From: Haliotis rubra
Taxonomy: Eukaryota
Reading direction: 5' to 3'
Length of the DNA stretch: 64,000 nucleotides
Assembly (NCBI RefSeq): GCF_003918875.1
Contig: NW_025767044.1
Coordinates: forward strand, 558,001 to 622,000
In this document: piece by piece, positions 23,803-49,075 of the stretch
How the letters are laid out: the number at the start of each line of letters is the position of its first letter
Position numbering within the stretch: the first letter of the stretch is position 1
The notes under the pieces: model-generated
What the model was told of the DNA's origin: nothing
The model's database searches: none
What the model saw: only the letters and a program-made list of their open reading frames with translations
Program-made: the position numbers and the translations under genes

Positions 23803-24067
23803 AGACGCTATATATTTCCTCACAACAACATAAAAAGTTAAACCAATCAAAATTGCAATATGAAACCTGTGTAAAAGTAACTACTGTGAAACTTATATTT
23901 AACTTATGCTACACATAGTAGGGAATTACGCATTAAACAAACATTGCCATTTGACTTTGGTGATTATACTAGACTTTTATTCATAGATGCCAGACAGACT
24001 GCAAAATTCTACCGTTACGTGGGCGACAGTGTTCCTTTGATAATGCCATGATAAGTATCTACATGTA

Positions 24068-25269: not shown

Positions 25270-27074
25270 TATCTACATATACAGCCTAACTGCGCAATAC
25301 AATTCTCCAAAAGGATGTTTTATGTACAAAACTATTATCCAAATAAAAAACAAATTGGTTTGACATTGTAACCTGAGCCTAAAATCGATGTAGGAATCCA
25401 ATCTGTTCCACCTACACATTCACGACACATGCGTGTGTCAAGTCCAGAGCTTGCCCAGAGGAAGAGTTTTGTCAAAGAGATGTATAGGGGAGACACGGCG
25501 CCGTGACCTACATGCTGAACATATGCAGTCGGTTACATGACACCGCAGCCATGTAATGAATTAGTTTCTGGGATCACCCCCAGTGGTATTGTAATGTTAT
25601 TAATGGGACAGTTGGCCGTGCGTGGGAGGGACAGTTCGGTGGGGTAGTTTACCTAAAATCAGAGTCCTTGGACCAGGTCTCAGCGGCGTGGAACATGTTC
25701 ATTATCTATACTGAGTGCGGTGCTAAAACAAGACACACAAAAACCCTTATTATGAGTGTATCGATCATATGAGATTGCATCCTGAAGAACAACTTAGTGT
25801 TCCCGAATTACTCGGGCCGAATTTATATATATTACAAAGCAGATTGTTCTAGTTATAGAACTTTATGAAGTTATGTAAGTCATCTTGTTTATCAGTTCCA
25901 CTCTACCTCTCGACAAACACATTCATCGTTTACATCTTCCAACATACATGGGGGAGTTTGAAGAATAGCTAACAAAACGAATGTTTGTTTATGCATTGAG
26001 AAAACCATAACTCGTGAAATATCTTTTCAAATATGCCAGTGTCAGGTTATTTAAAGATACAGTATCGATTCGCATGTACATATCACTCACATGCCATAAA
26101 GACTCTTGATCAACGTATATTCAACCTTTTAAACCAATTAATCACATTTGACGTCGGCGAACATGACAAATATAAATATTTCTCCTGATATTGTAACTTA
26201 AACTTTCATCGTTTGTGGGACATAAATACTATATCAGGAATTGGTTTCATCTTATTGCCAGTTAATGAAAACGATAATGCCAAATTGTCGGCGCGTTGCC
26301 AATGAAGTCTTTTGATGTTTACATTACGACCACAGACCGTCTCGCCTTATCCAGTGAACCGATTTGCTGCATGATAAACTCTCACTGTATTTCTCGCTTG
26401 TGGCACCTTAACACCTTGGTGGTCCTAAAAAGGTTTGTGTTTGTCTTGTGCGATATTTAGTCGTAAGGATTTGGCAAATGGTAACTTATTGAAAAGGAAA
26501 AAAGTAACGGTGTGTGTGCCTGTGCGTGTGTGTGTGCGTGTGCACGCAAGACAGTTAACAGAGATCTTGAGGAGAGGACAGTCCTTATGTTTTCCATACC
26601 TATATACATGTGTATAGACAAACATGCATGTCCTAGTCACACTTAACATCACAAAACATGAACATCGCGAATTATTAAATGGTGTGGACTTTTATTCCAA
26701 GTAAGCCTACGTCGCAGGTTTATCCTTAGGTTCACGGTTTATATTGACAGTTAGTTTAAACCTTACGTTCGCTCATGAAATATCACATGTGTTGTTTGTG
26801 TAGTAAAGAACCAGTTGTATTCCTTTCAGGACGCACTGTACTTTGCTGATGTGTGTGGAGGGGCGGCAACAGGGGTGGGGAAGGAAGGGACGAGATCGTG
26901 ATCAAGGTACCAGATCTTAACCCGTGCTAATGCGGCATTATGATGTGGTTTCATAAATAAATACCTAACACAAACAGATACACATTATAAACTTGAACAT
27001 AAACAGAACAGAAACAGAACAGAACTACAACGTATATAAAGAACAGGTAGTGTTTGCCCAGTTTAAGGTTTGAT

Positions 27075-27289
27075 NNNNNNNNNNNNNNNNNNNNNNNNNN
27101 NNNNNNNNNNNNNNNNNNNNNNNNNNNNNNNNNNNNNNNNNNNNNNNNNNNNNNNNNNNNNNNNNNNNNNNNNNNNNNNNNNNNNNNNNNNNNNNNNNNN
27201 NNNNNNNNNNNNNNNNNNNNNNNNNNNNNNNNNNNNNNNNNNNNNNNNNNNNNNNNNNNNNNNNNNNNNNNNNNNNNNNNNNNNNNNNN
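27075..27289. other. Assembly gap (215 N)
   Basis: Run of N. Confidence 1.
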
Positions 27290-28054
27290 CTTTAGTTATA
27301 ATCTAACACGAAAGCATCAGCTAAACAGTGAAGGACACATTAATACTGAGCTCAGTTGCATAGAGCGTTCCAGTTAGCCATTCAGGGTTTCTTCCTCAGC
27401 CGGGTTGGTATGTACTGATCATCGGTTGGAATCCCATATTCGCTCACAATTTGGTGCTTGTTCCTGACACAAAAGGAGAACGTAACACAGGCCTATTTAG
27501 ATTTCTCCCACAAAGTTGACGCGCCTTAGTGTTCCTGTCGCTGAAGTATTGTTCAGAACTGACTCAAACCACTCTCACTAACACATCATTGCTAGAAATG
27601 GCTAATATCTCAAGCACGAACATTCCTCAAATACAGGGTACATGCCATTGACACTTATTTAGTGCAATATTTGTCATTTTTGATTGAGTTTAGGCAATCA
27701 CAAATTTACAAAAATATTAGTACCACAAGATGAACCAAATGTTTGCGAAAGTCTGGACTTGGAATTTGCAAGTGTATTTGCTCATAATATGGTTCGGGTA
27801 TCAACATTAATACTGTGTGGTTTACATGGTAAAATTAAGTAGATTTCTGTCAACTCAATTTTAATAAACAAATTGGGAAAGGTAGTCAAATCACCGTATC
27901 AGGCATATTTGCTGTGTAGAATCCAGATCGCAATTGTATAGCTTGTGCGGCAACCATTACCTTTTACAAAACCTTGCAATTGCTGCACAATAACATTTAA
28001 ATCGATGTTTTCTAGCGTATATGTTATCCAGCGTATTTGCTCATTACAGTTTTG

Positions 28055-28202
28055 CTCAGTTACGTTGGTTTTTGCAATATTCAGCAATATCATGGCGGGA
28101 ACACCAGAAATGGGCTCACCTACTGTACCTATGTGGGGAATCGAACCCGGGCCTTCGGCGTGACGAGCGAACGCTTTGGACTACTAGGCTACCCCACCGC
28201 CT
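28055..28202 (-). mobile_element. tRNA-derived SINE family 1 (diverged)
   Basis: acaccagaaatgggct...ggggaatcgaacccggg...ctaggctaccccaccgc. Confidence 0.85.
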
Positions 28203-31200
28203 CTGCTCATTATAACTTTCGAATATCAACATTAATACTGTGTGGTTTACATGCATGACGAAGGTAAACTTAAACAGATTCTGTGAAGGTTTTAATAACC
28301 AAATTGGGAAAGGTAGTAAAATCACCGTATCAGGCATACTTACTGTGTAGCACCCAGATCAAATTTTCGTAGCGTGAAATGCAACATTACCTTAGTTTTA
28401 TATAACCTTGCTTCACAATAACACTTAATCGATGGTTTCCTTAAGGATATATGTAACGTAGAAAAGGCTCGTTTAAAATGACAAATGACAAATGACGTAA
28501 AGCTATTTCCAACTCTGACACTTTGAGTTCGGCAACTAAAAACAACGAACATCGTCCCACAAGTAGTAAAACACATAACATGTGACAAACTGTACACTGT
28601 ATATGCTACTGGCAGTATTCCTCGATGCCAGTACCGATGCACTGTTGACAACACTGTTGAAGAACACACACTTGACGTTCAATTAATGCATTTTATTTCA
28701 AGACCCCCAGAGGGTATTGATGGGACAGTTAGTGTGTTGTTTCCGATTTTCTCGAGTTCTTGTGGGATGGCATTTTCCCACATAGATATATTATATTTGC
28801 ATATTACTAAAAGAAGAGTGAAGTTTAAATCAAACATTTTTTTGGAGCTGGGTTTGTGTAGAAACTGTCGATTTGACGCGTGTTATCTAGCATTTAAATC
28901 GATAAAAGTTCAATCTAAAAGTCTTTCCTGATGGCAGTACATCAGTTCTTCAGGACAGGTAACCTTATGCTACATAAAATGTAACCAAAGCTCGCTGTTC
29001 ATGTGAATAGGAAACAACTTTATAAACGAACAACTTCATACTACCCTGTCGTTATCGTTGGTCATAAGCATCCTTGTCCTTTATCAAAACACCTCCTTTG
29101 TCATCGTCAATTGCAACCGCTGTGTTATGTCTATTACGTAAATGACATATGATACTTTTTAACAACAATATGTTTTCCCTTTTGTAGTCGTCACTTTATT
29201 ATCCATTTGGAACAAGAGCATTTTCAAGACACACAGATGTGTTGGCTGATTTTCTACACTTAACCATACTGTACAACGTATTACACAGAACAGTTTTATA
29301 GTGCAGTTGTATGCAACATATTGAGGATATATACTTAGTTATCACATAATAATGCTTGTTTAGTTCATAGATTTACATTGCGAAATGAGGTTTCCATTGG
29401 TTTACATAAAGTTACAATGACAACAAAACCTCCTGTAAACGGTAGAATGATGATATGGGGTACACGTGCATTACAGGTGGTATAATTCATTAACAATCTG
29501 TCTGGCTTTACAGAATATATTGTTTCATTCAATGGCAAGTCTGGTATGATAAAAAAGCATAGCGTAATAAAATAGCTTAAATCAAGGAATCTCGAAACGA
29601 TATCGGGAGGGAGGAAAAATATAGCACAATCATGACCCTGCTTACAATCTCAAACATGCAATCTCTGGAGAATTGTCATATGTTATAGGGAGGTTTTGAT
29701 TTTGATCTTCAAAAATAATGTTTGTTCGTTTGAAACCAAGCTGTTGCAAAGAATATTGTTATTCATGAAAACGATGAAACTAGAGAATGTATTTGTTGCC
29801 TAGTGGAAAGAGCATTCGGTTTCACAACGAGTTTGAATTCCCATAAAATAGAACTCATTCACTCACTCATCAGGATATGTCCATCCACAGCAAGCAAAAC
29901 CCTTTTTATTTGTTATATTCTAATATAACATACAAACATAACTTTCTGTCATTTTCAATTAGTGCTACTCGATCTGTGAGAAAAAAATGTTTCATAGCAG
30001 GACGCAGAACATTTAATTTCAGGTGCCAATACCATCTCTTGAGTCTCCTCTATGTGATGTACTCATACATGCAATGATCTGCTGTCAGCGACCTGTCACT
30101 CGGGTTGTTTCTCCAACGGAGAACTAATAGAGGAAGAGTGTTTTTCAATCGTTGGGAAATCCATAACGATGACAGTCAAGAGAAGAGGTGTCTATTTGTT
30201 TTGTATCCTTTGTTATACATCCACTGGTGGCGCTATAATTTGTTTTGTTTCCGTAAAATACCAAACAATGTTGGCCTTCTGTACTATTCCAGAGGGACAT
30301 GAATAAAGTATAATCAATCGGAAATGCGACAAGGTGAAAATGGGTTTCAGTGGGAAAAAGATAGATTGGTGTTGCTTTTGAAATCAATACTATAACTGGA
30401 CAATCAACGTGGACATTTATGAGGATATTTTTGTTGAGTATACCGACACATCTCTCCTCTTTCAGCACTGCGATCGATGAAGCTGACCAAATCGGACCTT
30501 AAAATATAATACTTTGAACAGTATGCCATTTTTATCAAATAATATGATGTGTGAGGAAAGTGAGTACGTTCCCAGCAATATTCCAGTTTTATGACGGCGG
30601 ACTGTAAATTATTGTATTTGGACCAGTGATTCATCTTAGCAAAGATCCGATCCGTCGGAATACAATCAAACGAAATAGACGCGGTCAACGAGTTTTCAGC
30701 CGGATCCATTTTGTCCACTCATACGACCAGCCGATGTGTATTGTCTGATCTAACCTGATCTGGTCAGAATGCAGTTACCGCAGTTGTAAAAGCAGTGTGA
30801 ATATATCTGCTATTTCGTAGACTGTCTCGGAGCACACGCTTTACAAGTTATCTTAGTGTGCCTGTAGCTAGCTGGATTGGACGTCAACAGCATTCGCTGA
30901 CGCCTTTGCATGTGGAAACTCTACTTGAATAGATGTTTCAACGTGGGATGGAAATTTATTGATTATTTTCAAATGCAACAATCATAACACAAGATGTCCA
31001 TCTTTACAACACACCATACAACTTAATAATTCATACATGTACACAAGTGGTAAAAGTGGACCGTGAGATGGTCCGTTGTATTTACGGTTGCCTGACCCAT
31101 TTTCAAAATGGTGTTTAGCTGTTCAAACTCGTAATAGATGAAACTCCCGAGGTCATTTCGTAATAGGTCACTAATTTAATACGAACAGCTGTACAAGTAA

Positions 31201-31920
31201 TATACTCTTCATTAAAATGAACGTGTTTTAAGAACACATCTTCACATCGTTTTATGCAATCTTTTCAAAGACAAGATATCTGAATACATTTTTATGGAAA
31301 TACCTTTCTTTTTTCCAATTTCGTTTTCCTTGCGGCCTCGTTGCCTTGCGTTGTTGAATCAATACCCTCAGCGTGGCAAACAAAGATTACTCCGAACAAG
31401 GCGCCAGGCGCCGAAAAAATAATCAACAAATTTGTGGCCGGGGAAAGTGTTAATGGAGTAATCTGCTGGACTTGCCTGTGACAAAATGGTGAGATGATAT
31501 ACAGTGATGGCCTCTGCCTGCACTAGATCATCGATGGGCGCTTTCTACATACAGGAGGGAGTTTACTTTTGCAGTTATGAAATGAAGCTGAAGAGACTTG
31601 GTCCAACCGGTCAAACAGAGATTTATATTAAATGGAATTCTTTTGCCAGTGATAATTAAAATGTAAGTTTGAATAGGCTATGTGTGAATGACCCTTTGTC
31701 ATAAATCACACATATATTATGTCTAAGCACAAAATATAATCGGGAATTATGTTGTTATTGTTTAGCTTTTCCTTTAGTATTTAAATACACTACCAGATGT
31801 AGTTTGTTGTTATACGGCAACATTACCATAGTTCAAATTTGCAACATCCATGATATGACGTTTTCCTGCCGAATATCGCAAATGATTTATAGGCGTGGTT
31901 ATGAATATAGATATGACCAT

Positions 31921-32160
31921 GAGTGAGTGAGTGAGTTAAAATTTAACGTCACACCGGCAATATTTCAGCCATATAGTGACGAGAACAAAGTTAGTATATA
32001 TGATAAATATCTGTCACGAAGGAAAGTAAAACTTTAGCAACGTATCACAGAATGCAAGTATAAAAAATTATCATTTCCAATTCTAAAAATGCAACTCGAT
32101 GTGACATATATTAACATTAAAACACGGGCTATGGACCACCAAAGATATGACCATGATTAC
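31921..32160 (-). mobile_element. Nimb/I-type LINE 3' tail
   Basis: gagtgagtgagttaaaatttaacgtcacaccggcaatatttcagccatatagtgacgag... Confidence 0.75.
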
Positions 32161-32752
32161 CCCTGCCACATAATGTCGTGTATCAGTCTTGATGCAAGCC
32201 ATGCACTTGTAGATGGAGGCAGTTAACTTCGACTTATGATCTACAAATGCAATGAGAGACAACATCCAATTACACACCCGTGAGTGCAATAAAGAGTTGC
32301 AAGGCGAAGCGTTGGACCGTGTAAATATTCCATAGCACTGCATCCATACTATAACCCGATACCATCCGCCTGCCAGGATGTATCGGATGGGAGTTACGTG
32401 TGATTTATACAGGGTTCACATCTGCTGGAGCTGTTCTCTCTTCAGTTCCTGAAGGTGTCAGCATGACACCAACCGTTTTGCCATGTCAGTTAATTAGCCA
32501 ACGTTTCCTACTCCTACCATTATGCTGTGGAGGTTGTATGCGGTAAGAACTAATTGGACATAATATACGACAACGGCAGCTGCTTCGGTAATGGCAATGA
32601 CGACGGCCATATGTAAAGTGGCTTTACAAAATAAAGGTCAGGATGGATTGATCCAAACGGGACATGACTGCCGGTAACTACAGCAGCAATGCAGTGGTGT
32701 CGTTTACTACCCTAGTCGTTCACCCACAGGTACCAGAAGTTGGTATTGCTGA

Positions 32753-32977
32753 TGAGTGTGTGAGTGAGTGTAGCTTTTCGCCACAATCAGCAATAGTCCA
32801 GCTATATGGCTTCGGTCTTTAAATGGACCAGAGAATCCAGTGATAAACATCATGGGCATCGATCTACGCAGTTGGGATACGATGACACGTTTCAACCAAG
32901 TCAGCGAGCCTGACCATCCGATCCCGTTAGTCGCCTCTTACGACAAGCTTAGGATGCTGATTATCAAGTCTAACCCG
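32753..32977 (-). mobile_element. SINE family 2, left-arm-specific
   Basis: Reverse complement of family-2 body with (actc)n tail; absent from mirrored site ~42810-42850. Confidence 0.8.
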
Positions 32978-34149
32978 TTTTTTCGGGTTATTGCTGATGA
33001 ACATACAGTAGATAAGTACGAACAACACTCGAACAGAAAAGACAATATATTGTGTATGTTAAATTGAGTTTACACATTCAACACCGACTACAGTCGAACC
33101 CAAGAGTAAGCTTACCCTAAGGTTTTGAAAATATCTGAGAAAAGTCGTGGCGGAAAAAACTATATATTTGTACATAGACATGTTATACCAACGTATACCT
33201 AAATACCAGCTATCCCTGTCCATCAAGCACAAAAATGTGTTGTTTGTCCTAGCCTACAACGAGTCATTCTTCGATGTTGCATTATAGCTCAATATATACA
33301 ATATATTGCAATGTAAAATGGATGCATACAGAATATCAAAACACGTTTCTGCAGTAATGATATATTTCCATATGAAGGACTTTGGACATTGTCATATATT
33401 TCACGTTTCTTTGATAGAAAGAAAGCTAAATTATTACTTATGTTGAAAAAGTCGGATTTGGAGAATCAGAAACTAATATCCACAGATAGGCTTGTCTCAT
33501 ATATATAGCTATCAGCAAATATAAACTGGCCAGAAGACTGTGATGTATTGCTTGCAGTTTGATTTACGTGGTAATTCTCAATTTTATCGCTATTTTTCAA
33601 GTAGTGTGCTCGATATGTGTAAGATTTATTGGATCTGAAGATGAAATAACTTTTTGCATCTGGATTTCTCATAGAAAAGCCCATTACGATGAAGGCCTGG
33701 TTGTTTGTTTTTAAGATGATTTACTTATTAGTAATAGACAGACACAATACATGCTTTTGGAAAGAGGCTGGATTCCAAGTTACGTCAACAACTTTGTGGT
33801 GATATGGTTTGACTGGCTGTAATAACATTTCTTGCTATTATAGGATCAGTTGAAGCATATCCAATGACAAATGTACTAGTCTTCCGCTCTGTTGCGCTGT
33901 ACAGCACTTGACACCTATTGACTTAAGCCGTGTGAATATGTATATACCGGACGCGTCAGCAGTTTTCATAATAAACCAAAGGTGAGGATATACCACATAA
34001 ACGTCAAGAAATCACTCAATATGAAAATATTGACGGAAAGCCGTGTGATGAAAGCGGAATGTGTTTAATAATAAGTCGTCTTCTATAGCGCACAGTCTCC
34101 AAACACCAAGTGTTTGCTCTCGGCGCTTAATCAGAATATGATTCTTATT

Positions 34150-34300
34150 ACCCCGGATAACCCAAGCTGCCTGTTAGGCGCTAGAAGGTTATAGTCACAT
34201 GACTTTATCCAACCGGGTACCCATTTTCTGCTGGGTGAACAGAGGCAACTTTGAACAAACTCACTTGCTTAAGGTGAGACCACATGTATCACATGTGCTT
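34150..34300 (-). mobile_element. SINE fragment of a third family (conserved central domain)
   Basis: gggtacccattttctgctgggtgaacagaggc...cacttgcttaagg; reverse complement resembles the cacccagc..aaatgggtacc core of invertebrate central-domain SINEs. Confidence 0.5.
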
Positions 34301-34326
34301 CGGAAACATGAAATTTATTCTGTTTA

Positions 34327-34572
34327 AGTGAGTGAGTTAAGATTTTACGTCACCTCGGCAATGTTTCAGCCATATAGTGACGAGAAATGTTTTACATAAA
34401 CAATAAATTTAAGTTGCTAAATAATCAGTCAACGAAGGACTGTAAAATAACTAGAGTATCACAGATGGAGTCTAAAACTAGCATGAACATGTAAAACTAT
34501 TTTATTTACGAAGACAATACAATATAAAAACGGGCTATAGGTCGCCAACAACTGAAGGTAGATCACCACACT
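34327..34572 (-). mobile_element. Nimb/I-type LINE 3' tail
   Basis: Close match to 54742-55005. Confidence 0.75.
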
Positions 34573-37277
34573 AACACCGAATGCAGCAATAATATGGTGG
34601 CAGCATGTAGATAAACGAGTGTGGACTCAAATAGTTTTCAAATTTTGAAAAAAAGTTCCGCCCAAATTAATTTGCCACTAGTAGTATAAAACCCGTGAGA
34701 GTAACAGGATTTCATTTCTTTTCATTTCAAAAGGAAAATCGCCTCCATCATAATAAAACATAACAGAGTTAAAATCGTACACACTCATTTCCCGAAGATG
34801 TGAGACGTCCGAACACCATCCACGCTACCCAAGGCTACCTTACCTTTCAAACTTGCCACAATGATTAGGCGGCAACGGTGTTAAATGGGAAGTTTAAACA
34901 CACATCACACAGTCCGTTTTTTGCCATTGTATCCGTCGATCCGGTGAGTAAAATCAGTGTTAACTAGACGTTTCTCTTTGTTCTCAGAAGTCATTTTGAG
35001 CGCATAAACTCTATCACTTTAACGAAATTACACCACACTAATAGGCCTCGTAGACAGCATATTGTCAGAAGAAGTGTGTCAGAGAGAGTTGCCCAACTTC
35101 AGTGTACTGCCAATTGACTAAATGTTTCGGGCAGACCGATAAACATCGCTCCATCAAATATGAAATGACCTTTGCAAGCGTTAAATGTTCCTATCACAGG
35201 ACAAAGTCGTACTTAAGCAATCGTCGGAGTTAAAGACACCCGTGGGATTGTACTGTATATTATCGTGATGTGAAAGGTTGGTTTCGTCATTTCGTAAAAT
35301 GAATTTTAGATATAATGGATGACATACGACGCTTAGAGTCTAAAACCTTAAACTGTATATTTGATTACATATGTAAGACGTCATTAAAGATAACCACATG
35401 TAATACATTGTTTGGAACTTATGTGAAAGGACAAAGCCTTTCCCAGTAGAATTTGTTTTGGCAGACACTGATCATCGTGAAATTATTCTGAGCATCATTT
35501 TTTAAGAAGATACGTTATATTTATTGTTCCGAAACATTATAGGGTTGAGTCACATCGCTAATCACCTCTGCCCATCTATGTCATTAACCATTTAACATGC
35601 ATACAGATCTTATGAGTAGTTTACCCAATTTTCTTGAAAACCAGCTATATAAATATGATAAAGATATCTCTTGATGTCCAAATAGACAGAAAGAGTAATG
35701 GAAATATTAAGCTCTCTAGGTAATGGTTGCTACCCGATTATGTGGATCAGTATCTTATAAAAAACATATATTTTTCTCTAGAAACGTTTCGTTTAATGCA
35801 AGACTTTCTTTTAACGGAAAGAAAACGTTATTAATAGTGCTACAGATGATCGATGCAATTATGATATAAGTTTCAAAGGATACAGCGGAAAGAATCAATC
35901 AAACAATCACACTCGTATATCTTATAGCACACTGTGACAAGATAGTCACCTGGAAAGAACACTACCATGTCTATTATCCTTCTGGCCACTAAGTGCTTTG
36001 CATGAAAGATTTATTTGTCCATTTCAAGTGACTTTCTTTGTAACGGTGTCCTAAATAACCATTGTTCTCATGGTGTATGAGTCCTCGAATGGGTCCAGGT
36101 AATCAGGCGAGACTGGCTGCGATAGTAACACAACATTTACAGATTTTCATGTAAATATGTCAGATTTTTAGATTTACTATCTCTGGTTAATTAGTCAGTT
36201 AATGGAGCACATCCACGATACAGGCCTCACACATGGAGGCATGTTTAGATATTTACAGTTGTCATACAAACCAACGTTAAGCTTAATCACATCATGTTGA
36301 AAGGTTATACAGTATAATTTATTGAATGGTGATAAGGACTCTTCGATTTGCATCTGAGGACGGAGGCATTTTTTGCAACATGCGTTTTATGTGGGGCTCG
36401 ATAATATAGCCGGGATTTTCGAATGGGTCCAGGTAATCAGGCGAGACTGACTGCGATAGTAACATAACATTTACAGATTTCCATGTAAATATGTCAGTAA
36501 GTTGAGTGGTATTACGATCTATGGTTAATTAGTCAGTTAATGGAGCAAATCAACGATATAGGCTCTGGAGTCTCCAACACGAAAGCCTGTTCACATATTT
36601 ACAGTTGTCATACAAACCAAAGTTAAACTTCATGTTTAATGGTTATACAATGTTATTTACTAAAAGTAACTGGGTGTCGTCGATTTGAATCTGACACAGA
36701 GCTACATGTGTTGTTGTTAACATGCATTTTATGTGAGGATCGATAATATAGCTGGGTTTTTCTGGGAAGGAAGTCTAAAGTAAATATGTGTGAAATACAT
36801 CTTCTTACTGAAATACTAATTGAAAGACTACAGCACCGTGGATATTGTCCCGCCTTGAAAATATTTGAAATATGTTCGGATTTTGTCATTTCATACAAAT
36901 CTGCTACATATACATTACACAATGAAGTGCGATTTAAACATAAGTAAACCTGAGACTATACTCAATTTCACAACTATCAAAAGCCATATCATCCCATCTG
37001 TCTGACATCGATCATCCAACATGTAAATGTTGCAGAGTGTGCTGGATGTAGTTAACTGATGTCTTCCCTAGTCCCCCATTACCGAGGCAGTCCACAACAA
37101 CGGCGTCCCTGATTACAAACTCCAAGAATCGTTCATTTGCGATAATATCAGTCATATATTTGTGTTTTCACCGGCTCTTGCACCACAGCCTGCATAATAT
37201 CTTGTCCCTCTCGTCGCTCTGGTTACGCTGGGCTTGCAGATCTGAATGACGCAGATCACCTTACTCTGATAACATTC

Positions 37278-37335
37278 AGCCGCCATATAGCTGGAATATT
37301 GCTGAGTGCGGCGTAAAACTAAACTCACTCACTCA
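37278..37335 (+). mobile_element. 5'-truncated SINE tail with TSD
   Basis: gccgccatatagctggaatattgctgagtgcggcgtaaaactaaactcactcactc, TSD ctgataacattc (37266-37277/37336-37347). Confidence 0.85.
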
Positions 37336-37348
37336 CTGATAACATTCC

Positions 37349-37460
37349 TGTAACTAGATTTACGAAGCTCTCTTAGAGCTAATATAGTCGTAAATGTCAT
37401 ACATTAACATTAACGTACGACTATCTTAGCTCTAAGAGAGCTTAAAAAATCTAGGCCCTG
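37349..37460. mobile_element. Short hairpin MITE
   Basis: ctagatttacgaagctctcttagagctaatatagtcgta ... tacgactatcttagctctaagagagctt....aatctag: near-perfect ~40-bp inverted arms; absent from mirrored arm. Confidence 0.75.
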
Positions 37461-40400
37461 GTATTTACCTAGTACTCCCGGAAGAGGTATTAAACCTTGA
37501 GCCTCTCATTCCCGAGTACTATAGCATGTCCTTGGCAAAACATGTTCCCAACTGACCTAATCCTTGGGTCAATGTGTTCGCCTTGCGTATCATGAGCTAC
37601 TTAAATCCGCTCTATATTTATGCTCTACTTACAAATTATTATGCAGTGTCATCAATTACTGACTGTCTTTAGGCAAAGACGAAGCCCCATCGTTGAAAGG
37701 CTGTGTTGGTATTTATTTTATGGGACATACATCATGTGACGAATTTTTCTCAGTGGACTCCAACTTTGGTCATTTTGGTCAGCAGTGATACTTGGTTCAG
37801 CTGAATGGCATCTGGGGCAGTGATTCCTGTGTAATTAGAGCAGCGCCGGCAACATTACTGAGAGTTGGAGTGATGTAGCACTTAAATGACCATGTTCAGA
37901 AATAATTTGCTTTGTCTTTGAAAGGTAACAGCAGTTAGGTATATGTTTACTTAAGGTAACTGGAATGCAACAGTGAATAAAAACGGAACATGACAAAATG
38001 AAAACCTGTCAGTGGTCTTGCCGGTGCCGCTCTTATTACACAGCATCATCACCAGATGCCAAACTACCTTCCATTGCTGTCCATAAACAGAAAAATTAAA
38101 AAAGGTACGTTCGTCACATGATGAATGTTCCATACAACCACAGCAACATAGACTTCCAAAGATCTGGCAAAGTCTTTGCCTGTAGACAGTAAGTAATTGA
38201 TGACACCGCATGACGATTTGTAAGTAGGGAATGCATATAGACGTCTTGAAGTAGCTCGTGGCAAGCAAGACGAACACGCTGACGCATAGATAATGTCAGC
38301 CGGGAACTGGTTTTGCAGGTGGCATGCTACAGTTCTCGGAATGCGTGGCACATGTTATACCGATATGCTTGAATACCTCTTCCGGAAATACTAGGTGATG
38401 ACTGGTAATGTTATCGGAGTAAGGTGATCAGCGCCATGTGCAAGCCTAGCATAAAACGAAACACGAGAGGGACAGGATATCATGCAGGCTTTGGTGCAAG
38501 GGCGGGTCAGATCACAAATATATAACCGATATTATCGAAAACTAACGTCCTTTGGAGTCTGATTCAATCAGGACCGCTGTTGTTGTAGACTAATGCTGCC
38601 TCGGTAATGAGGCATGACGGAAGACATCAAATGACTAGAACCAGCAAACTCTCCAACATTCACATGCAGGGTGGTCGACATCTAACTGATTGGATGATAT
38701 AGCTTTAACAGTTATGAAATTAACAATAGTGATCGAAGTTTCATTATGCCCACACCACACTTCTTTGTGTGATGTACATTTATCAGATTTCTATCACATG
38801 ACACCATTTTCAATATCAGAACACTAGTTCAGATATTTTCCAGGCGTGTCTACCCATATCCATATTCTTTCAATTCCTATTTTGATAACTCGATCTATTT
38901 TACACAGTTTTACTTTTAGGCTCAATTGAATACTGTCCCATTTGAGAAAATCCCAGCTATATTATCGATCCTCACATAAAACGCATGTTGCAAAAAATGC
39001 CTCCGTCCTCAGATGCAAATCGAAGAGTCCTATCACCATTCAATAAATAACACTGTATAACCTTTCAACATGATGTGATTAAGCTTAACGTTGGTTTGTA
39101 TGACAACTGTAAATATCTAAACATGCCTCCATGTGTGAGGCCTGTATCGTGGATGTGCTCCATTAACTGACTAATTAACCAGAGATAGTAAATCTAAAAA
39201 TCTGACATATTTACATGAAAATCTGTAAATGTATGTTGTGTTACTATCGCAGCCAGTCTCGCCCCAATTTCATTGACCAATTTGCTGCTTCATAAATTCC
39301 CAGAACAATGGTTGTTTTTCGGACGCTGTTACAACAAAAGTCAATTGAAATGGCCACATATTTTTTATGCAAAGCACTGAGTGGACACAAGGATTGTAGA
39401 AATGGTAAACTAATTTGTCATATTGTGTATATAAGATACCTTCATCATATGTATATACTTGGTTTTCAAGAAAACATGCATATAAAGAGATTAATGGCAT
39501 AGATGGGCAGAGATGATTAGTGATGTGTATTGGAATCATAAATATACCAATATATCTTCTTAACACTTCATGAAAAAATACTTTCAAGATCATCAGTGTC
39601 TGCCAAAATATATTCTACAGGGAAGGCTTTGTCCTTTCATATAAGTTACAAACAATATATTAGTTGTCTTATGATATTTTATATACCATAACTAACAAGG
39701 GCAGAGATGACACTGAACCCCAAAGAGTTATTAGAATCCCAAATATAACACATGTTTGTGAAACCTCATGCTCATAACACCGTCAATATGGTCGCTGTTT
39801 GTTATTGATGGATTGATGGATTTGAAAAACCCAGCAATTTTTACAGGAAAAGGCTGTGTCCTTTCATGTAAAGTTACAAAAATGCATTAACTATCTTTAA
39901 TCACGTTTTCCATATGTAATCAATCATATAGTTTAAACTTTTCGACTCTAAACGTCGTATGTCATCCATTTTGTCTAAAATTCGTTTACAAAATGATGAA
40001 AACAACCTTTTACATCACCATAGTATATAATACAATCCCTTTGGTGTCTTTACCTGCGACGATTGCTGTGACAGGAAAACTGAACGCTTGCGGAAGGAAT
40101 TTCATAGTTGATGGAGCGATGTTGTATCGGTCTGTTCCGAAACATTTAGTCAATTGGCAGAACACTGAAGTCAACTCTCACTGACATCTTCTGACAATAT
40201 GTTGTCGACGAGGCCTATTAGTGTGGTGTAATCTAGTGAAAGAGATAGAGTTAATGCACTTCAACTCAATTTTGAGGAGCAGTGTAAACGCCCAGTTAAC
40301 AATGATTTTGCAAACCGGATCGATGGATACAATGGCAAAGACTGTGTGGAATTGGTTACAACTCCACATTTAACACATTTGTCGCCAAATCATTGTCGCA

Positions 40401-43375
40401 AGTTTGAATTATATGTTCTATAGCGTTTGGTGACGTAGATGGTTCAATTAGTTGGACGCCTCACGTCTTCGGGTATTGAGTGTGTGTGATTTTCGCACTA
40501 TATTTTTTTTTTTTACTATGACGAAGAAGAGTTGCCTTTTGAAATTAGAAGAAACAGAATGCAGTTACTGCTCATTGTTTTGATCGCTACTAGTAGCAAA
40601 TTGATGGGGCGGATCGGTGAAAATCACTTTTCACCGTGATATTTGTCATAATGCATTCCACAAAGGAATACATACTGAAAGCAAAAGTAGATTATCCTCC
40701 TTTTAGAAAGTGTGTTCTACTGATTTGGAACAATCCAATTACATCAAGCGAATATTAGCCTCTTGATATTGTACAAAACTTCATACTTTACGAATTTTAC
40801 ATTTTATTCAATACTGTCATTCCACTGTAAATGTCGCAGCTAATAGCTGCAAAATTGCTTACGTGGCGTTGGACAATACTCACTCACTTTGATATGTTAC
40901 ACTGATAGCATTCTTTCTGGTGGATGTCAAACACGGGATAATCTGGTCTAAATTAGTTTGTCTATAGGTAGCCCCATAATATTGCTGCCGTTAAACAAAA
41001 TAAAGCCATGCAAGATATTCGGTTTTCACCACATAACTCTCCGTCAATATTTTCATACTGAGTGATGGCTTGAGTTTATGTGATGTATCCTTACCTTTGC
41101 TTTATTATGAAAACTCCTGGCGTGTCCAGTATATACATATTTACACAACTAATGCCAATATGTATCAAGTGCTATACTGTGCACATGAGCGAAATACAAG
41201 ACCATTTGAGATAGGATATGCTTCAGCTGATCCTATCACTGCAAGACATGTTATTACCGCCAGTCGAGCCATATCATCACAAAGTTGTGGACGTAGCTTT
41301 GAATCCAGCCTATTTACAAATGCATGTATTGAACCGGGCACTTACCAATAAGTACTGTAACATTATCCTAAAGACAACAAACCAGGCCTTCATGGAAAAC
41401 TCTTTCATCTTCAGATTCAACCAATCGTGCACATAGCGAGCACACTACTTGAAAAATGGCGATAAAATTGAGAATTACCACGTAAATCAAACTGCAAGCA
41501 ATACATCACAGTCTTCTGAACAGTTTATATTTGCTGATAGCTATATATATGAGACAAGCCTATCTGTGGATATTAGTTTCTGATTCGCCAAATACGAATT
41601 TTTTCAACATAAGTAATAATTTTGCTTTCTTTCTATCAAAGTCCTTCAAATGGAAATATATCATTACTGCAGAAATGTTTTATTGATATTCTGTATACAT
41701 CCATTTTACATTGCAGTACATATTGGATACATTGAGCTATCATCGAAATATGACTTATGTATGCTTGGGTTCAGCAACACAGTGTTAGCCTAGATGGACG
41801 AGGATCTGCTGATACTTGGTTCGATTCCCCCCAGTCTGACAGGGATAATGGTCCTTTGGTTACCATTGCGAGACCGGTGCTCGTTGATTTCAATTGTAAA
41901 CGTATACGGCCTGACATTGGCATTCCTCTTTCAACACGCAGAGGAATGACTGAAATATAATAATAATTATTATTCAAGCCCCTCCAGATTCGTGTATCTT
42001 ACATCTTAATACGATTTTATTTGACATACGACATTCACAGAACCCCAACACTCACTGGTGTATTGAAGAAGCTATTGAGGGGACAGGATGTGTGTCTGAT
42101 TGGGATTAACGAGTAAGGTTAGAACGTACAAGATATGAGAGTTCATCATCAGAAAAAAGCCTAAAGTCGTATCTGCATTGCTTCAGCACTATAGCTTCTG
42201 GCAGTAACAGAAGCACGCAAAACATGACATGCAGCCAGTTGTAGCCCTTAAAACCTTTCGAAATCTAGCGGAAGAAAAACAAATACAAATAACCTCCAAG
42301 GGCGTTAATGGACCTCCCAGTGTTGTGTTTCGATTTTTTGTAAAATTCTGAGGACAAAATTCTAAACAATGTTTAAAGAATTCTCTCACCACGCGACAAC
42401 TATCAACATTGGTACAAATATCTACGTACAAGTGTATTCATAGTTTTACTCTCGACACGGTATTGCTGGAATGTTTCCAAAAACACACTCAGGAAGCTTA
42501 CTCCTTTTGGTTCGCCTGTAGTTGGTGTTGAAACTCTGAACGAATGAATGTTTACAAGTTGCAATACTCAAACCTAAACATTGAATCCCGATGAAGGAGC
42601 ATGCATATGCTCCTAAACGTCGTGTTATTCACACCAAAAAAAGAGAAGTTTAGTTAACATCCATAAATCTTGCTTTTCTGACACAAGTCCAAAACCTTAG
42701 GATAAGCCTACTCTTTGGGGTTCGCCTGTACTCGGTGTTGAAACTCAATTTAAGTACACTATAAATTGTCTTTTCTGTTCGGCTGTTCGTACCTTTCTAC
42801 CGTATGTTCATCAGCAATACCAACATATAGTGGGTGAAAAACTTTGGAACTAAACAACGCGACTGCATTGCTGATGTAGTTACCGGCGTCGTACCGTCAT
42901 GTCCAGTGTGGATCAATCCATCGCGACCTTTAAATTCTAAAGCCACTTTACATATCGCCTTCATTGCCGTCATCGTACATTGTGTAGAGTTAGTATTGAT
43001 CACATGCAACCTCTACAGCCTAATGGTAGGAGTAAGAAACGTTGGCTAATTAACTGACATGGCATGACGGCTGGTGTCATGCTGACACCTTGAAGAACTG
43101 AAGGGACAACAGCTCAAGTAGATGGGAAGCCGGTATGAATCACTCGCAACTCGCTTCCGATACATCCTGATAGGCGGATGGAATCAGGTTACAGTATGGA
43201 TGCAGTACTTTGAAATAATTGCATACAGTCCAATGCTTGACCTTGCAAGTCTTTATTGCATTCATGAGAGTGTACGTTGACGTTGTTGAAATTAACTGCC
43301 TCTATCTACAAGTTCAAGTTTGCATTGAGAATAACTATGCTGATGACTATATTGATATGTTTTATGGCATGGGTA

Positions 43376-43547
43376 ACTGACCTGACTGACTGAGTTTGGT
43401 TTAACGCCGCTTTTAGCAATATTCCAGCAACATCACGGCGGGGGACACCAGAAATGGGTTTCACACATTGTACCCATGTGGGGAATCGAACCCGGGTCTT
43501 CGGCGTGACGAGCGAACGCTTTAACCACTAGGCCACCCCACCGCCCC
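43376..43547 (-). mobile_element. tRNA-derived SINE family 1, right-arm-specific
   Basis: Full-length copy, TSD ggcatgggta (43366-43375/43548-43557). Confidence 0.92.
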
Positions 43548-46114
43548 GGCATGGGTAGCCAAGGTCAAAAATATCTTCATTACTACGACAATCATCTAAA
43601 ATGTGGGCTATGCTTATGACAAACAAATTACAACTGTTAGTGAATCAAAATGCTGAAGGAAACGCAAAACTAGAGAATAATATAAGCCCCGAATATATTT
43701 GTGGCTAGACATTATACATGTGCGTTTTATGACTAAGGGTAATAAATTCATAAACCTTTCAACTTTAATTATCACTGACAAGACAATTCCATTTATTATA
43801 AATCTCTGTTTGACCAGTTGTTCCATAACTACAAAGGTAAACTGTCCTGCGGGTGGCAAGTGCCTTTCAATGATCTAGTGCAGGCAGAGGGCATCATACT
43901 ATCATCTCACCATTATGTCCCAGGCAAGTCCAGCAGATTACTACATTAACAGTTACTCTTTCCCTGGCCAAATTTGATGATTATTTGTTCTGCGTCGAAA
44001 CGGTGCCGGCGCTTTGTTTAGAGTAATCGTTGTTGGCCACGCTGTGAGTATTGAGTCAACAACATGTGGCAACGAGGCAACAAGGAAAATGAAATTGGAC
44101 AGAGAAAGGTTTTTCCACAAGAAAGAGTTCAGATATCCTGTCTTTAAAATAGAAGCGACAAAACCCTTTCCAGATTCATAATAAATCTCGATTGTACAAT
44201 TGTGAATATATCATGAGCAGATATTTGTTTCAGCAGTATTACAGTTGTTTTAAACAAATCCAGTCTGATCCAGACAATCCAGTGATTGTCACCATGCCAT
44301 ACGATGACAGAGCATGTGTTTATGAATCACTATGAAATAGTGATGATACCAGGTGTTCGCGAAAAGGTGAGCGTATCCTGCCTCGTCTGGTCATTTGATC
44401 ACCTAAAATAATTCGGGAACGCATAGTATAAGTCAAAATAGGGACTTGCATCGGACATCATTTTTGTCACTGATGCATCAAATTCTGAAATTTCCTCCAC
44501 ATGTCTACAATAAAACTTCTTGAAAACTTTACTGAAGCCTTTTATGTACCTTGTTCAAACAACTTCTCAGCAAGAAGAGTATATGACTTATACATCTATT
44601 CGTATTACATCAGTGAATATTACAACAGTTAACTCCATTTTGAATATAGGTTAAGCAACAATAAGTATAACGAATCATTTACTCAAATTTGATGTCAGGA
44701 ATGCTTGCTGAAAAGGGATTCTGCTGGTAACATGTGTACACCTGTATGCAATTTTGTTGTTAAAACTATAGTGAGTGTGTCGTAACATGGACAGATTCAT
44801 TTGAAAATAATTATCAATTTCCGCTCCATGTTGAAATACCTTTCCAGTAGAATTTCCACAGGCAGACAGTCAGGGTCTCAGCAATGATGTTGACGCCCGA
44901 ATGAGGAAAGTGCACACTAAGATACCTTCTAAAGAATTCACTCTGTGGGAGGCTACGGAACATGAAACTCGCCGCAACAGCATATATTTACATTTCTTTA
45001 AAAAATGTGGTAACTTCGCTGTCATACGATCAGGGTATATCAGACAATACACGTCGACTGGCGACACAATTGATCGGATTGATTGGTGACCCGATGATTG
45101 TGTATCACTGTACTTTGACGGATTGAATCTTTGCTCATAAGATGAACTACTGATCCAGATTCGATTCTTAACAGACCGCCGTCATAAATCCGGATTATAG
45201 CTGGGAATGTACTCGCCTTCATCACACATCACGCTTTGATAAAACTCACATACTGTTCAAAGTATTATATTTTAAGGTCCACTTTTGTCAGCTTCGTCGA
45301 TTGCAGTGCCCCATGGAGAGAGTTGAAAGTCCAATTATAGCTTTCATTTCAAAAGCAACACCAGTCCATCTTTTCCCATTGAAACACTTTTTCACCTTGT
45401 CTCAATTCCAATAGATTATGTTTTATTCATGCCCCTCTAGAATAGTATAGAAGGCCAACACTGTTTGGTAGTTTACGGGAAAAAATGAAAGTGCCACCAG
45501 TGTGCGTAAACGTGAATGTAATCCTTTTCGGATGCAAACAAATAGACACGTGTTCTTTTGACTGTCAGCATTATGGATTTCTCAACGAATGAAAAACACA
45601 CTTCAATTATCTTTATTAGTTCTCTGTTGGAGAAACATCCCAAGTAAAAAGTCGCTGACAGATCGACGCATGGGTGCATCTCATAGAGGCGACTTCAAGA
45701 GATGGCATTGGCACCTGATATTAAATGTTCTGCGTCCTGCTGTAAAACATGTTTTTCTCACAGATGCACTGGCAATAATTGGAAATAACAGAAAATTATT
45801 TTTGGAATATTTGTTAGAATATAAAGACTAAATAGGTTTTGCTTGCTGTGGATGGACACACCTGATGAATAAGCGAGTTATATTTTGAGGAATTCAAAGT
45901 ATGAAGAACGCTCTTTCCATGTATAAGACAATCAAATATATTTTCTAGTTTTCTCGTTTCATGACATAACGATATTCTTTGAAACAGTTTGGTTTCAAAC
46001 GAACAAACAATAGAGATTGTATAAATTTGTGTCATTACTGAGCTGTATTTACCATCTTTCTCGACATCGCTTCGAGACTAGTTCTCTGTTTGCCCTCGAT
46101 CTTCCATATTGCGT

Positions 46115-46252
46115 TTGGCTCGTCGTCACGCCGAAGACCCGGGTACGAGTCCCCACATGGGCACAATGTGTGAAGCCCATTTCTGGTGTCCCCCGCCGTG
46201 ATGTTGCTGGAATATTGCTAAAATCGGCGTAAAACCAAACTCAGTCAGTCAG
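46115..46252 (+). mobile_element. 5'-truncated SINE family 1
   Basis: TSD tccatattgcgt (46103-46114/46253-46264). Confidence 0.9.
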
Positions 46253-48386
46253 TCCATATTGCGTATATGGTAGTACACTTTGCTTTTGGATCATGTCAGA
46301 CTCGCCATCGAATAAGGCCGGTGGACTTATGTGCCAATCACCTCCCGAACCTGTATATTATTTAAAGCAATAAAGATTGCCAAAAACGTATACCACCTAT
46401 ACTGTACTTGTACCACACATCATCATGTTTACAAGACGTTTTGTTGTCATTATAACTAAATGTTTACCAAATATGTATTTCGCAATGTAAATCTATTAAC
46501 TAAATAGGCATTATTATGTGATAGGAAAGTGTATATCCGCAATATGTTGCATATAATTTCACTGTAAAATTGTTCTGTGTAATGCGTTGTGCAGTATGGT
46601 TAAGTGTCGAAAATGCTCTTGTTCCAAACGTTTCCAAAGAGTTTTCATTTTATCCTGAACACCATCATTCCAAATAAGGTTGGATATTACATTATCCTTG
46701 AATATATTGCTCAACAACCACAAAGACTTTGAAATTAGGAACAGATTTCATTTTGGTGAGGACACAGCATGAACCCGCACTATGATCTAGAGATTTTGTA
46801 GTGCTTTATTGTTAAATGAGCTATTTAGTATTTTCAAAAGTTTCCCTTATCCCGAGTGCATCAGAATATAATATTTGCTGGATTACAGAGTATCCCACTG
46901 GGTTACCTCTATACGATCTTCGTTTAAAAGTCATTACATCACATTTCATGAAAAGGTAATTATCAAACCTTTCAGTTAACAACCAAACAATTACAAGGGT
47001 CACAATATTCTTCAACCTGTTCTCAGTGAGGGCAAGCTCCTCTAGAACCGTCTGAAAGTGTAAATAGCCTACTGAGGTGGATTGGAAAGATAACTCCTGA
47101 TTGAGCATGTCACTAATGACATAAACGGTTGCATGCACATTGGTTTAGGAGATTCGGTTTTATCAAAGCCCAACGCTGCTAGCCAGATTATATGAGCGAG
47201 CAAACTAGTAAATGTTCCTACGTTAAAAAGAATCATTTCTCCTCTACGTTGTTGACATAACGCAGTGGTTGCAACTGGCAATGATAAGAATTGTGTTTTG
47301 ACAAAGGACAACCATGATTGTGACCAACGTTAACAACAAGGTGGTACGAAGTTTATCTTGTTGGCAATTTTCACATGAAGTGTCATCCTTTGGTAAATGT
47401 ATGTAACATATAGTTTCTTGTCGTGGAGACATTATCTACTCCCATCTAGAACGAACTATAAATAGCAGTAGTCATATGGACAGGGTTTCTTTTGCAAACA
47501 AACTTAGCTCTAAAATGTTTCATTTCAACTTCGCACTGCGTTTAGTAATGCGCAAGTGATATCAAAGTTATTAACTCAAATATGTTGCTTCACCCAATGT
47601 ATCCATGTGGGAGAATGCAATCCCGCAAGAACTCGAGAAACTCGGAAGTAACACGCTAGCTGTCCCATCAATACCCTCGGAGGGTCTTGAAATAATTATT
47701 ATTTCTATCGTTTAAATTGAACGTCGAGACCAGGAGTATGTGTATGTGCTTCCGGTATTGTCAACACTACATCGGAATTGGCGTCGAGGAATACTGCCAT
47801 CAGCAGATATAGTATACAGTGTGTCACATGTTATGTGTTTTTACTACTTGTGAGACGACTGTTATTGTTTTTAGTTGCTGAATTCTTATTGAAACTGTCA
47901 GAGTTGGAAAAAGCTTTAAGTCATTTGTCATTTTGAAAATGAGCCCGTTCAATGTTACACATATCCTTAAGGGAACCAATCGATTTCAATGTTATTGTGC
48001 AGCGAGGTTTTGTAAAAGGTAATATTTGCAATACAATTTCGATCTGCGTTCTGCGCAATCAATGTTTGTTTTGTTTTAAATTGAGTTGACACAGAATCTG
48101 TTAAATTTTACCATCCACATACATGTAAACCACACAGTATTAATGATGATACTCGAACCTTATAAAGAGCAAATTCACTTCCAAATACTAAGTCGCGACT
48201 TTCGGAGCCATTTCATGTATCTTGTGTTACTAATATTTTTCCAAATGTGTAACTGCCTAAAATCAATTTAATATGACAAATATCGCACTACATATATGTC
48301 ATGTACCCTGTATTTGAGAAAATTACATGCTTGAGATATTAGCCATTGGAGGCAATAATGCATTGGTTTGAGTCAGTTCTGAACAA

Positions 48387-48744: not shown

Positions 48745-49075
48745 TATTCCAGCTACATGAACACTGTGGCGCGTCTGGGAGGAATCTCCAAAACCAGTCT
48801 TACATCTTCCCTTTGTGACAACAACGAGCACCACATTGTGACAAATAACGTCAAGGGGAATATAGGATTACAACCGATGCTCAGCGAATATGTTTTTCAA
48901 AGTTTAGATGGCATATTTTAACTACATGTTATGATGCTGGGTCGACATGGGTTACATTAAAACTGGATGTTAACATATGGCAACGTATCAGTTCAGTCAG
49001 TCACATATAATTTGGCATCAAATATTAAACTGGGCATGCAGTGTACATTACCCGTACTTTTATTACTTTTTGTTC

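What the first reader, a model, noticed from the sequence alone, without database searches (positions are those of the whole stretch)
36087..36770. Arm-to-arm templated insertion: ~310 bp copied from the right arm into the left arm
Seen: the left arm has two tandem versions of segment B, both starting gaatgggtccaggtaatcaggcgagact (36087 and 36421). The first (36108-36420) is almost identical to the reverse complement of 38946-39263 (one 4-bp indel, a few other differences). The second (36421-36770) is the old diverged left-arm version. Entry homology is ggcgagactg.ctgcgatagtaac; exit microhomology is aatggg. Inference: template switching to the opposite arm and back (FoSTeS/MMBIR- or SDSA-like), direct evidence that the diverged arms still pair physically.
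Basis: partly seen in the sequence, partly recalled or inferred. Interest (0 to 1): 0.7.

Follow-up and report, generated by a model that had tools for sequence, protein, structure and literature searches.

The report
Opposite-arm copy inserted into old palindrome
In a non-coding, much-decayed 28-kb palindrome of an abalone genome, about 305 bases of the right arm were copied in reverse beside their old left-arm counterpart; this is a real, clean example of a known kind of DNA-copying error and has no evident function.

Summary
The left arm carries two tandem units with 334-bp spacing: L1 at 36085-36420 and L2 at 36419-36762. From 36106 to 36420, L1 matches the reverse complement of right-arm 38946-39263. 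The differences are 5 substitutions, a 4-bp indel and a 1-bp indel. L2 is only about 80% like either, close to the 76% mean identity of the two ~14-kb arms. At 52 sites L1 agrees with R against L2, and at none does L1 agree with L2 against R. The genome holds no other close copy. Both units open with the same 31 bp, of which the first 21 are left-arm type. The right arm and four old paralogues each carry a single unit, so the extra unit is derived.

Short-read contigs show about 2x depth over L1/R and contain the junction sequences. They point to the insertion in all three samples laid, including one labelled as another organism, so it looks old and probably fixed.

My best reading (0.6) is a single template-switch event that returned 31 nt behind its departure point. 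The main rival (0.28) is a tandem duplication followed by ordinary arm-to-arm conversion. This is a known mechanism in non-coding DNA, so interest is modest. This scan holds no earlier finding of this kind.

The parts
23475..37864 (.). Left arm of a large decayed palindrome. It is non-coding, with a single ORF of 110 aa or more across the whole structure.
   Evidence: The chain of inverted BLAST matches has a constant axis near 37,925. Mean arm identity is 76%. ORF list.
38006..51357 (.). Right arm of the palindrome.
37865..38005 (.). Central spacer between the innermost matching arm segments.
   Evidence: The innermost chained match is 37806-37864 with 38061-38006.
36085..36115 (+). First copy of the 31-bp left-arm-type segment. 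Its last 10 nt (36106-36115, ggcgagactg) are shared perfectly with the right arm and mark the switch point at the mirror-image site.
   Evidence: At 36085-36105 L1 and L2 agree with each other and differ from R at 10 positions (9 substitutions and a 1-nt indel).
36116..36420 (+). Inserted tract templated by the right arm. The first R-type marker is 36116 and the last is 36414. The final 'tc' at 36419-36420 is ambiguous between donor and acceptor.
   Evidence: 52 sites L1=R≠L2, 0 sites L1=L2≠R, 5 L1-private substitutions.
36419..36449 (+). Second copy of the 31-bp left-type segment, re-copied after the return switch.
   Evidence: 31/31 identical to 36085-36115.
36419..36762 (+). L2, the original and diverged left-arm version of the unit. 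It continues colinearly into the inner left arm.
   Evidence: 36440-37276 matches 39263-38407 at 73%; 82% to R.
38946..39263 (-). Donor template R, the single right-arm version of the unit. Both of its flanks are colinear with the left arm.

Best explanation
This is one mutational event of the template-switch kind (FoSTeS/MMBIR, or SDSA with template switching). A DNA strand was being synthesised through the left arm. It left its template within ggcgagactg (36106-36115) and re-primed at the exact mirror-image site of the right arm (39254-39263), where 10 nt match perfectly and 24 of 25 match overall. It copied about 305 nt of the right arm's top strand, down to 38946. It then returned to the left arm at a 2-nt 'tc' microhomology, 31 nt behind the point it had left. 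The outcome is a 334-bp gain: an inverted copy of the right-arm unit followed by a 31-bp re-copied left-type segment, with the old left-arm unit L2 untouched. In the four-point template-switch notation the order along the chromosome is 4-1-3-2, so point 4 precedes point 1. The same product arises if synthesis ran right to left, in which case the nascent strand could have folded back and used its own newly made right arm as template. What is shown: the anatomy, the uninterrupted donor-type tract, the derived state of the extra unit, and its presence in the reads. What is inferred: that it was a single event, the direction of synthesis, and the enzymology. The structure has no evident function and is a mutational footprint in non-coding DNA.
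For: The tract 36116-36414 is uninterrupted R-type, with 52 sites L1=R≠L2 and none L1=L2≠R. L1 and R are 97-98% identical against a 76% arm background, and this is the top outlier. The 31 bp at the start of both units are identical. Their first 21 bp are left-arm type and differ from R at 10 positions (9 substitutions and a 1-nt indel). Zero differences in 21-31 bp has p about 0.003 to 0.0005 if the tandem were as old as the L1-L2 divergence. R is single and colinear with the outer flank of L1 and the inner flank of L2. Four older paralogues of the unit in the window are all single. No other close copy exists in the 1.38-Gb assembly, so the donor is the opposite arm and not a mobile element. 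In the reads, a collapsed L1/R contig sits at about 1.7-1.9x flank depth in X1 and X2, while R's interior is left uncovered. A contig starting at 36086 joins left-type prefix to R-type sequence. In X4, a 1,658-nt contig crosses the entry junction, an 867-nt contig runs from L2 back to 36391, and two separate 1x contigs cover the same interval of L1 and of R. The departure point and the return point lie only 21-31 nt apart, which is natural for a switch-and-return. [quoted passage not shown] Inverted nearby-templated insertions with junction microhomology are the published MMBIR signature (PMC8421209). All five substitutions are private to L1 and form two tight pairs (p about 0.01), which would fit error-prone repair synthesis.
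Against: No allele lacking the unit and no intermediate allele was seen, so a single event is argued from economy and is not shown. The return junction has only 2 nt of in-register microhomology. The better 9/10 match (ctc[g/a]aatggg) lies 2 nt out of register, so either the junction is nearly blunt or it was changed later. The template is 2.5-3.1 kb away and the copied tract is about 305 nt, both much larger than the short-range events catalogued in the cited papers. The read evidence comes only from short-read contigs. The exit junction is bridged by 29 nt on one side, just under the tool's own 31-nt rule. The 5:0 asymmetry in private substitutions is weak on its own (one-sided p = 0.03).
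Confidence: 0.6

Rival explanations
1. This reading proposes two separate events. First, a recent tandem duplication of the 334-bp left-arm unit arose by slippage or unequal exchange at 'tc'/'aatggg'-like short repeats flanking the unit. Second, ordinary non-crossover gene conversion overwrote the first copy with the right arm's sequence.
For: The unit is flanked by similar short motifs: tcgaatggg at its start and tcaaatggg after its end in R. Such motifs could promote a simple tandem duplication. Two further tracts of 93-96% identity without any length gain lie in the same palindrome (33300-33650 with 41400-41720, and 25338-25577 with 50716-50953). They suggest that plain arm-to-arm conversion of a few hundred bp may occur here. 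A conversion tract would be forced to stop at the L1/L2 junction because homology ends there.
Against: It needs two rare events at the same place within a short time, because the 31-bp prefixes are still identical. The left end of the supposed conversion tract falls only 21-31 nt from the duplication breakpoint with nothing to enforce that. Conversion between sequences about 20% diverged is strongly disfavoured by established knowledge of mismatch-repair anti-recombination. No intermediate allele was seen in three samples.
Confidence: 0.28
2. This reading treats the extra unit as an assembly artefact, created by mis-joining or mis-polishing long reads across two similar arms.
For: L1 and R share perfect runs of about 180 bp, and no long read could be inspected. 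Short-read contigs break at the repeats, so none spans L1 plus L2.
Against: Depth over the L1/R sequence is about twice the flanks in both runs of the probable source sample. K-mer contigs join left-type prefix to R-type sequence. L1-private letters are present in the reads, since the contig covering 36106-36406 has 0 other letters. An independent sample under another organism label has separate 1x contigs for L1 and R as well as L2, and contigs crossing both junctions. Fold-back read artefacts would give near-identical arms, not arms at 76%.
Confidence: 0.04
3. This reading proposes an old tandem pair, in the left arm or in both arms, with the right arm later converted by L1 (direction L1 to R) or losing one unit.
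For: The L1-L2 divergence (about 18-22%) equals the arm divergence, as an old tandem would predict.
Against: The 31 bp opening both units are identical, and 21 of them are left-type. That is not expected at 22% divergence (p about 0.0005 to 0.003). All four older paralogues and the right arm carry a single unit. A recent conversion would still be needed to explain 98% identity.
Confidence: 0.05
4. This reading proposes that L1 and R are two recent insertions of one mobile element.
For: The unit is bracketed by short similar motifs that resemble a target-site duplication. Distant relatives of the unit occur elsewhere in the window.
Against: The whole genome has only three matches, all at this locus. 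R sits at the position orthologous to L2 and has colinear flanks. The window paralogues are only 55-65% identical.
Confidence: 0.02

Closest known systems
Template-switch mutations under the four-point model (Löytynoja and Goldman; Walker et al. 2021, PMC7954356) and MMBIR templated insertions (Osia et al. 2021, PMC8421209)
   Same: The insert is an inverted copy of a nearby template on the same chromosome. Both junctions carry homology or microhomology. The return point lies behind the departure point, which gives a short direct duplication. A pre-existing imperfect inverted repeat becomes locally near-perfect.
   Different: The scale differs. The first switch lands on the exact mirror-image homeologous site of a 28-kb palindrome. 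The example is germline, probably fixed, and in a mollusc.
Arm-to-arm gene conversion in large palindromes, such as the primate Y-chromosome ampliconic palindromes (from general knowledge)
   Same: Sequence information moves from one arm to the other over a few hundred bp, and the donor is unchanged.
   Different: Classical conversion replaces the recipient tract without changing its length and keeps arms above 99.9% identical. Here the recipient copy survives beside the new copy, 334 bp are gained, and the arms are only 76% identical.
Quasipalindrome correction by intra-strand hairpin template switching (Ripley 1982, cited in PMC7954356)
   Same: A nascent strand could use the opposite arm of an imperfect palindrome as template. 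The right-to-left version of the event fits self-templating.
   Different: Classical cases involve hairpins of tens of nt. This one would need a displaced single strand of 2.5 kb or more, which is more like BIR or SDSA synthesis.
Foldback or snap-back templated insertions at double-strand breaks (yeast, PMC11724301; Pol theta end joining, from general knowledge)
   Same: These are inverted templated insertions primed at microhomology.
   Different: Reported inserts are mostly about 5-34 bp (abstract of PMC11724301). This tract is roughly ten times longer, and a clean two-ended break does not explain the 31-bp duplication.

Membership tests
Template-switch / MMBIR-type templated insertion | The inserted sequence is a copy of a nearby template in inverted orientation. 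| tested here: met
   L1 36106-36420 matches the reverse complement of 38946-39263 at 97-98%, with the template 2.5-3.1 kb away.
Template-switch / MMBIR-type templated insertion | Homology or microhomology is present at both switch junctions. | tested here: met
   The entry has 10 nt perfect (ggcgagactg), 24/25 overall. The exit has 2 nt 'tc' in register, with a 9/10 match lying 2 nt out of register.
Template-switch / MMBIR-type templated insertion | The ancestral state lacks the insertion, so the change is derived. | tested here: inconclusive
   The right arm and four paralogues carry a single unit, which supports a derived state. No empty allele was seen in three samples, and no outgroup genome was available.
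Template-switch / MMBIR-type templated insertion | It arose in a single replicative or repair synthesis event. | not testable with these tools
   This is argued only from economy and from the 21-31-nt closeness of the departure and return points.
Arm-to-arm gene conversion (palindrome homogenisation) | The recipient tract is replaced without length change. | tested here: not met
   The old recipient copy L2 is intact beside L1, and the net gain is 334 bp.
Arm-to-arm gene conversion (palindrome homogenisation) | The arms are kept near-identical by frequent exchange. | tested here: not met
   Mean arm identity is 76%. Only three tracts of 200 bp or more, 209 to 315 bp long, reach 93% or above.
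Quasipalindrome hairpin template switch | The event is short-range, within a hairpin of tens of nucleotides. | tested here: not met
   The distance is 2.5-3.1 kb. Local DNA folds at both junctions are no better than shuffled sequence (z from +0.3 to -1.0).
Transposable-element insertion | Multiple dispersed near-identical copies exist in the genome. | tested here: not met
   The 1.38-Gb assembly holds only three matches, all at this locus.

The most novel reading that the evidence does not exclude
On this reading, the two arms of this 28-kb palindrome still exchange sequence repeatedly despite about 24% divergence. The evidence would be three tracts of different ages at 93-98% identity. The 334-bp insertion would be an aberrant product of that exchange, made by error-prone BIR-like synthesis, and it would still carry the synthesis error signature: five clustered substitutions, all private to the new copy and all in the last third of the tract near the second switch. 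That would be a preserved germline footprint of mutagenic repair synthesis in a mollusc, and a sign that palindrome geometry alone can sustain arm contact well below the usual identity threshold for recombination.
Probability: 0.2. Interest if true: 0.5.

Novelty: new member of a known kind. Interest (0 to 1): 0.3.

Why it matters
This is a clean natural example of a long-range switch-and-return templated insertion, with about 305 nt copied from 2.5-3.1 kb away. The donor, the surviving old recipient and both junctions can all be read in one sequence, because the arms had already diverged enough to tell them apart. It shows that old, decayed palindromes can still be partly renewed by copying between arms. 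A near-perfect 313-bp inverted repeat was re-created here. It is useful as a worked case for template-switch detection at distances beyond current tools, which search within about 100 bp. It touches no gene, suggests no new mechanism, and rests on one locus.

Tried and rejected
Mobile-element origin was rejected because the genome holds only three copies, all local.

Hairpin-induced stalling at the junctions was not supported. DNA folds of both unit starts, the L1/L2 junction and the donor end are no better than shuffles.

Coding or RNA function was not supported. There is one ORF of 110 aa or more in the 29 kb of the palindrome, and the only Rfam hit in the window is a tRNA-like element far away at 52056-52124.

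An old tandem pair was rejected by the identical 31-bp prefixes and by the single-unit paralogues.

A search for an alternative haplotig lacking the unit found none in the assembly.

A paper search to identify the assembly by its size found nothing. The organism is called abalone only on the word of an earlier scan note.

I tried to date the event against between-sample divergence. L1 and R differ at 1.6% against about 4% between samples over the 5 kb, but only 2-3% inside the unit. With five substitutions the comparison is too noisy to support a claim of later homogenisation.

The other scan notes added nothing on templated insertions.

Full report
**Setting**

The window is G000:C2154:558001-622000 of a 1.38-Gb assembly in 2,855 contigs. 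An earlier scan note calls it an abalone genome, which I did not verify independently. GC content is 38%.

The finding lies inside a large decayed palindrome. Inverted BLAST matches with a constant axis near 37,925 chain from 23475-37864 on the left to 38006-51357 on the right. The arms are about 14 kb each, the spacer is about 140 bp, and mean identity is 76% over 8,069 aligned columns.

The structure is non-coding. Only one ORF of 110 aa or more occurs in 29 kb, and there is no Rfam family there. Distant paralogues of parts of the arms occur elsewhere in the window, in line with scan note s1-352146.

**Observation**

- The left arm has two tandem units with 334-bp start-to-start spacing: L1 at 36085-36420 and L2 at 36419-36762.
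- L1 from 36106 to 36420 is nearly identical to the reverse complement of right-arm 38946-39263, here called R.
- Site by site, among 304 ungapped columns 247 are the same in all three copies. At 52 columns L1=R≠L2, at 5 columns L1 is private, and at none is L1=L2≠R. There are two indels: ACAT present only in R, and one extra A only in L1.
- The R-type tract is therefore uninterrupted from its first marker (36116) to its last (36414).
- L2 is 82% identical to R over ungapped columns, or 73-78% with gaps. That is ordinary arm-to-arm divergence.
- In 300-column windows along the whole palindrome, the L1/R tract is the top outlier.
- A whole-genome search finds only these three copies. The donor is therefore the opposite arm and not a dispersed element.

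**Anatomy of the junctions**

Both units open with the same 31 bp (36085-36115 = 36419-36449). The first 21 of these are left-arm type, with L1 and L2 agreeing and R differing at 10 positions (9 substitutions and a 1-nt indel). The last 10 (ggcgagactg) are shared by all three copies.

The left boundary of the copied tract therefore lies within 36106-36115. This is the exact mirror-image position of R's outer end (39254-39263), inside a block where 24 of 25 bases match.

At the other end, L1 reads gggattttc|gaatgggtcc while R continues gggattttcTCAaatgggac. In register, only 'tc' is shared. Either the return junction used 2 nt of microhomology, or a 2-nt slip in 'tctc' followed.

R's outer flank is colinear with the flank left of L1, and R's inner flank is colinear with the sequence right of L2. 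The right arm therefore has one unit where the left arm has two.

**Polarity**

Four older paralogues of the unit are all single and 55-65% identical: 5595-5938, 15103-15556, and the mirror pair 26103-26367 / 49469-49645. Together with the single R, this makes the left-arm doublet the derived state.

An old tandem pair is rejected. If L1 and L2 had been diverging for as long as their about 20% difference implies, the 21-31 bp at their starts should not be identical (p about 0.003 to 0.0005).

**Reads (short-read contigs only, no raw or long reads were on offer)**

*Runs X1 and X2* come from one sample, probably the source of the assembly.

- A contig over 36086/36106-36373/36406 has 1.7-1.9 times the depth of the flanks, and R's interior (39008-39174) is left uncovered. 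This is what two near-identical copies collapsed into one contig look like.
- The X1 contig begins at 36086, so it joins left-type prefix to R-type sequence.
- It shows no other letters relative to L1, so L1's private letters are real.
- Forms with and without ACAT are both present in X2.

*Run X4* is another study, carries another organism label, and is about 4% diverged over the 5 kb.

- A 1,658-nt contig runs from the left flank to 36205.
- An 867-nt contig runs from 37301 back through L2 to 36391. That is 29 nt beyond the L1/L2 junction, just short of the tool's 31-nt rule.
- Two separate 1x contigs cover the same interval, one on L1 (36243-36384, with a 6-bp deletion) and one on R (38982-39122).
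- That sample therefore also carries L1, L2 and R.

*Run X3* is a second sample of organism A at low depth. It has a contig that starts exactly at 36420, as in X1 and X2, which is the break expected from the duplicated 31-mer.

I conclude that the extra unit is not an assembly artefact. It is old enough to sit on haplotypes about 4% apart and is probably fixed. No allele without it was seen.

**Mechanism**

The simplest account is one template-switch event. Reading left to right:

1. Synthesis proceeds on the left arm up to 36106-36115 (point 1).
2. It re-primes on the right arm's top strand at 39254-39263 (point 2).
3. It copies about 305 nt down to 38946 (point 3).
4. It returns to the left arm 31 nt behind the departure point (point 4), re-copies those 31 nt and carries on through L2.

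[quoted passage not shown] Inverted, nearby-templated insertions with junction microhomology are the published MMBIR signature (PMC8421209).

Read right to left, the same product can be made by a displaced nascent strand that folds back on its own newly made right arm. I cannot tell the two directions apart, nor can I separate FoSTeS/MMBIR from SDSA with template switching.

A clean two-ended break with simple snap-back does not explain the 31-bp duplication. Local hairpins at the junctions are no better than chance.

One detail may point to error-prone synthesis. All five substitutions separating L1 from R are private to L1, because L2 agrees with R at each of them. They form two pairs 2-3 nt apart and lie within the last 97 nt of the tract (clustering p about 0.01, asymmetry one-sided p = 0.03). 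This is suggestive only.

**Main rival**

The main rival is a recent tandem duplication of the left unit followed by ordinary conversion of the first copy by R.

In its favour, the unit is flanked by similar short motifs. The palindrome also holds two other high-identity tracts without length change:

- 33300-33650 with 41400-41720, at 93-96% with a 29-bp indel
- 25338-25577 with 50716-50953, at 93-95%

They may be older conversion tracts, although slower evolution is not excluded.

Against it, two rare events are needed in quick succession at one spot. The left end of the supposed tract lies 21-31 nt from the duplication breakpoint with nothing to enforce that. The partners were already about 20% diverged.

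I put the one-step event at 0.6, the two-step history at 0.28, and all other readings together at about 0.1.

Physical pairing of the arms is not demonstrated, because proximity plus 10-24 nt of homology at the mirror site is enough. The event is not recent. The exit microhomology is 2 nt in register and not 'aatggg'.

**Verdict**

This is a real and well-preserved templated insertion between the arms of a decayed palindrome. It is a new example of a known kind of mutation, unusual mainly in its length and distance. It lies in non-coding DNA and has no sign of function, so interest is modest.

Noticed in passing
window 33300-33650 with 41400-41720; 25338-25577 with 50716-50953: Two further arm-to-arm tracts of 93-96% identity sit in the 76% background with no length gain. 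Neither has other close copies in the genome. They may be older gene-conversion tracts or slowly evolving segments.
   Followed up: partly
window 37278-37336, with flanking repeats at 37267-37277 and 37337-37347: A 59-bp piece of an extremely abundant element (read word-depth above 10^6 in every run) is inserted in the left arm only. It is flanked by an 11-bp direct repeat, TGATAACATTC. Copies of the same piece lie at 6432-6488, 19709-19765, 32752-32810, 43383-43439, 46195-46251 and 51965-52021.
   Followed up: partly
window 37354-37454: A small fold-back lies directly beside the abundant element and is absent from the right arm. Its arms are 39 nt and 90% complementary, with a 23-nt loop. It resembles the tiny fold-back retro-insertions reported elsewhere in this genome by the scan.
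   Followed up: no
window 5595-5938, 15103-15556, 26103-26367, 49469-49645: Old single-copy paralogues of the 334-bp unit (55-65% identical) occur both outside the palindrome and as a mirror pair within its outer arms. The locus was therefore built by several rounds of local duplication.
   Followed up: partly
window 35264-35395 and 35878-35898: The low-depth second sample of organism A (X3) shares a run of variants with the run labelled organism B (X4) against the assembly. This points either to a divergent haplotype shared across the two labels or to a mislabelled or hybrid animal.
   Followed up: no
window 52056-52124 (-): This is the only Rfam hit in the window: a tRNA-like sequence just above threshold (31.6 bits). 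It lies 35 bp from a copy of the abundant element (51965-52021) and within a repeat-family copy (51960-52129), so it is probably part of a tRNA-derived SINE.
   Followed up: no
window 27075-27289: A run of 215 N (assembly gap or masked) lies inside the left arm. It was left untouched.
   Followed up: no
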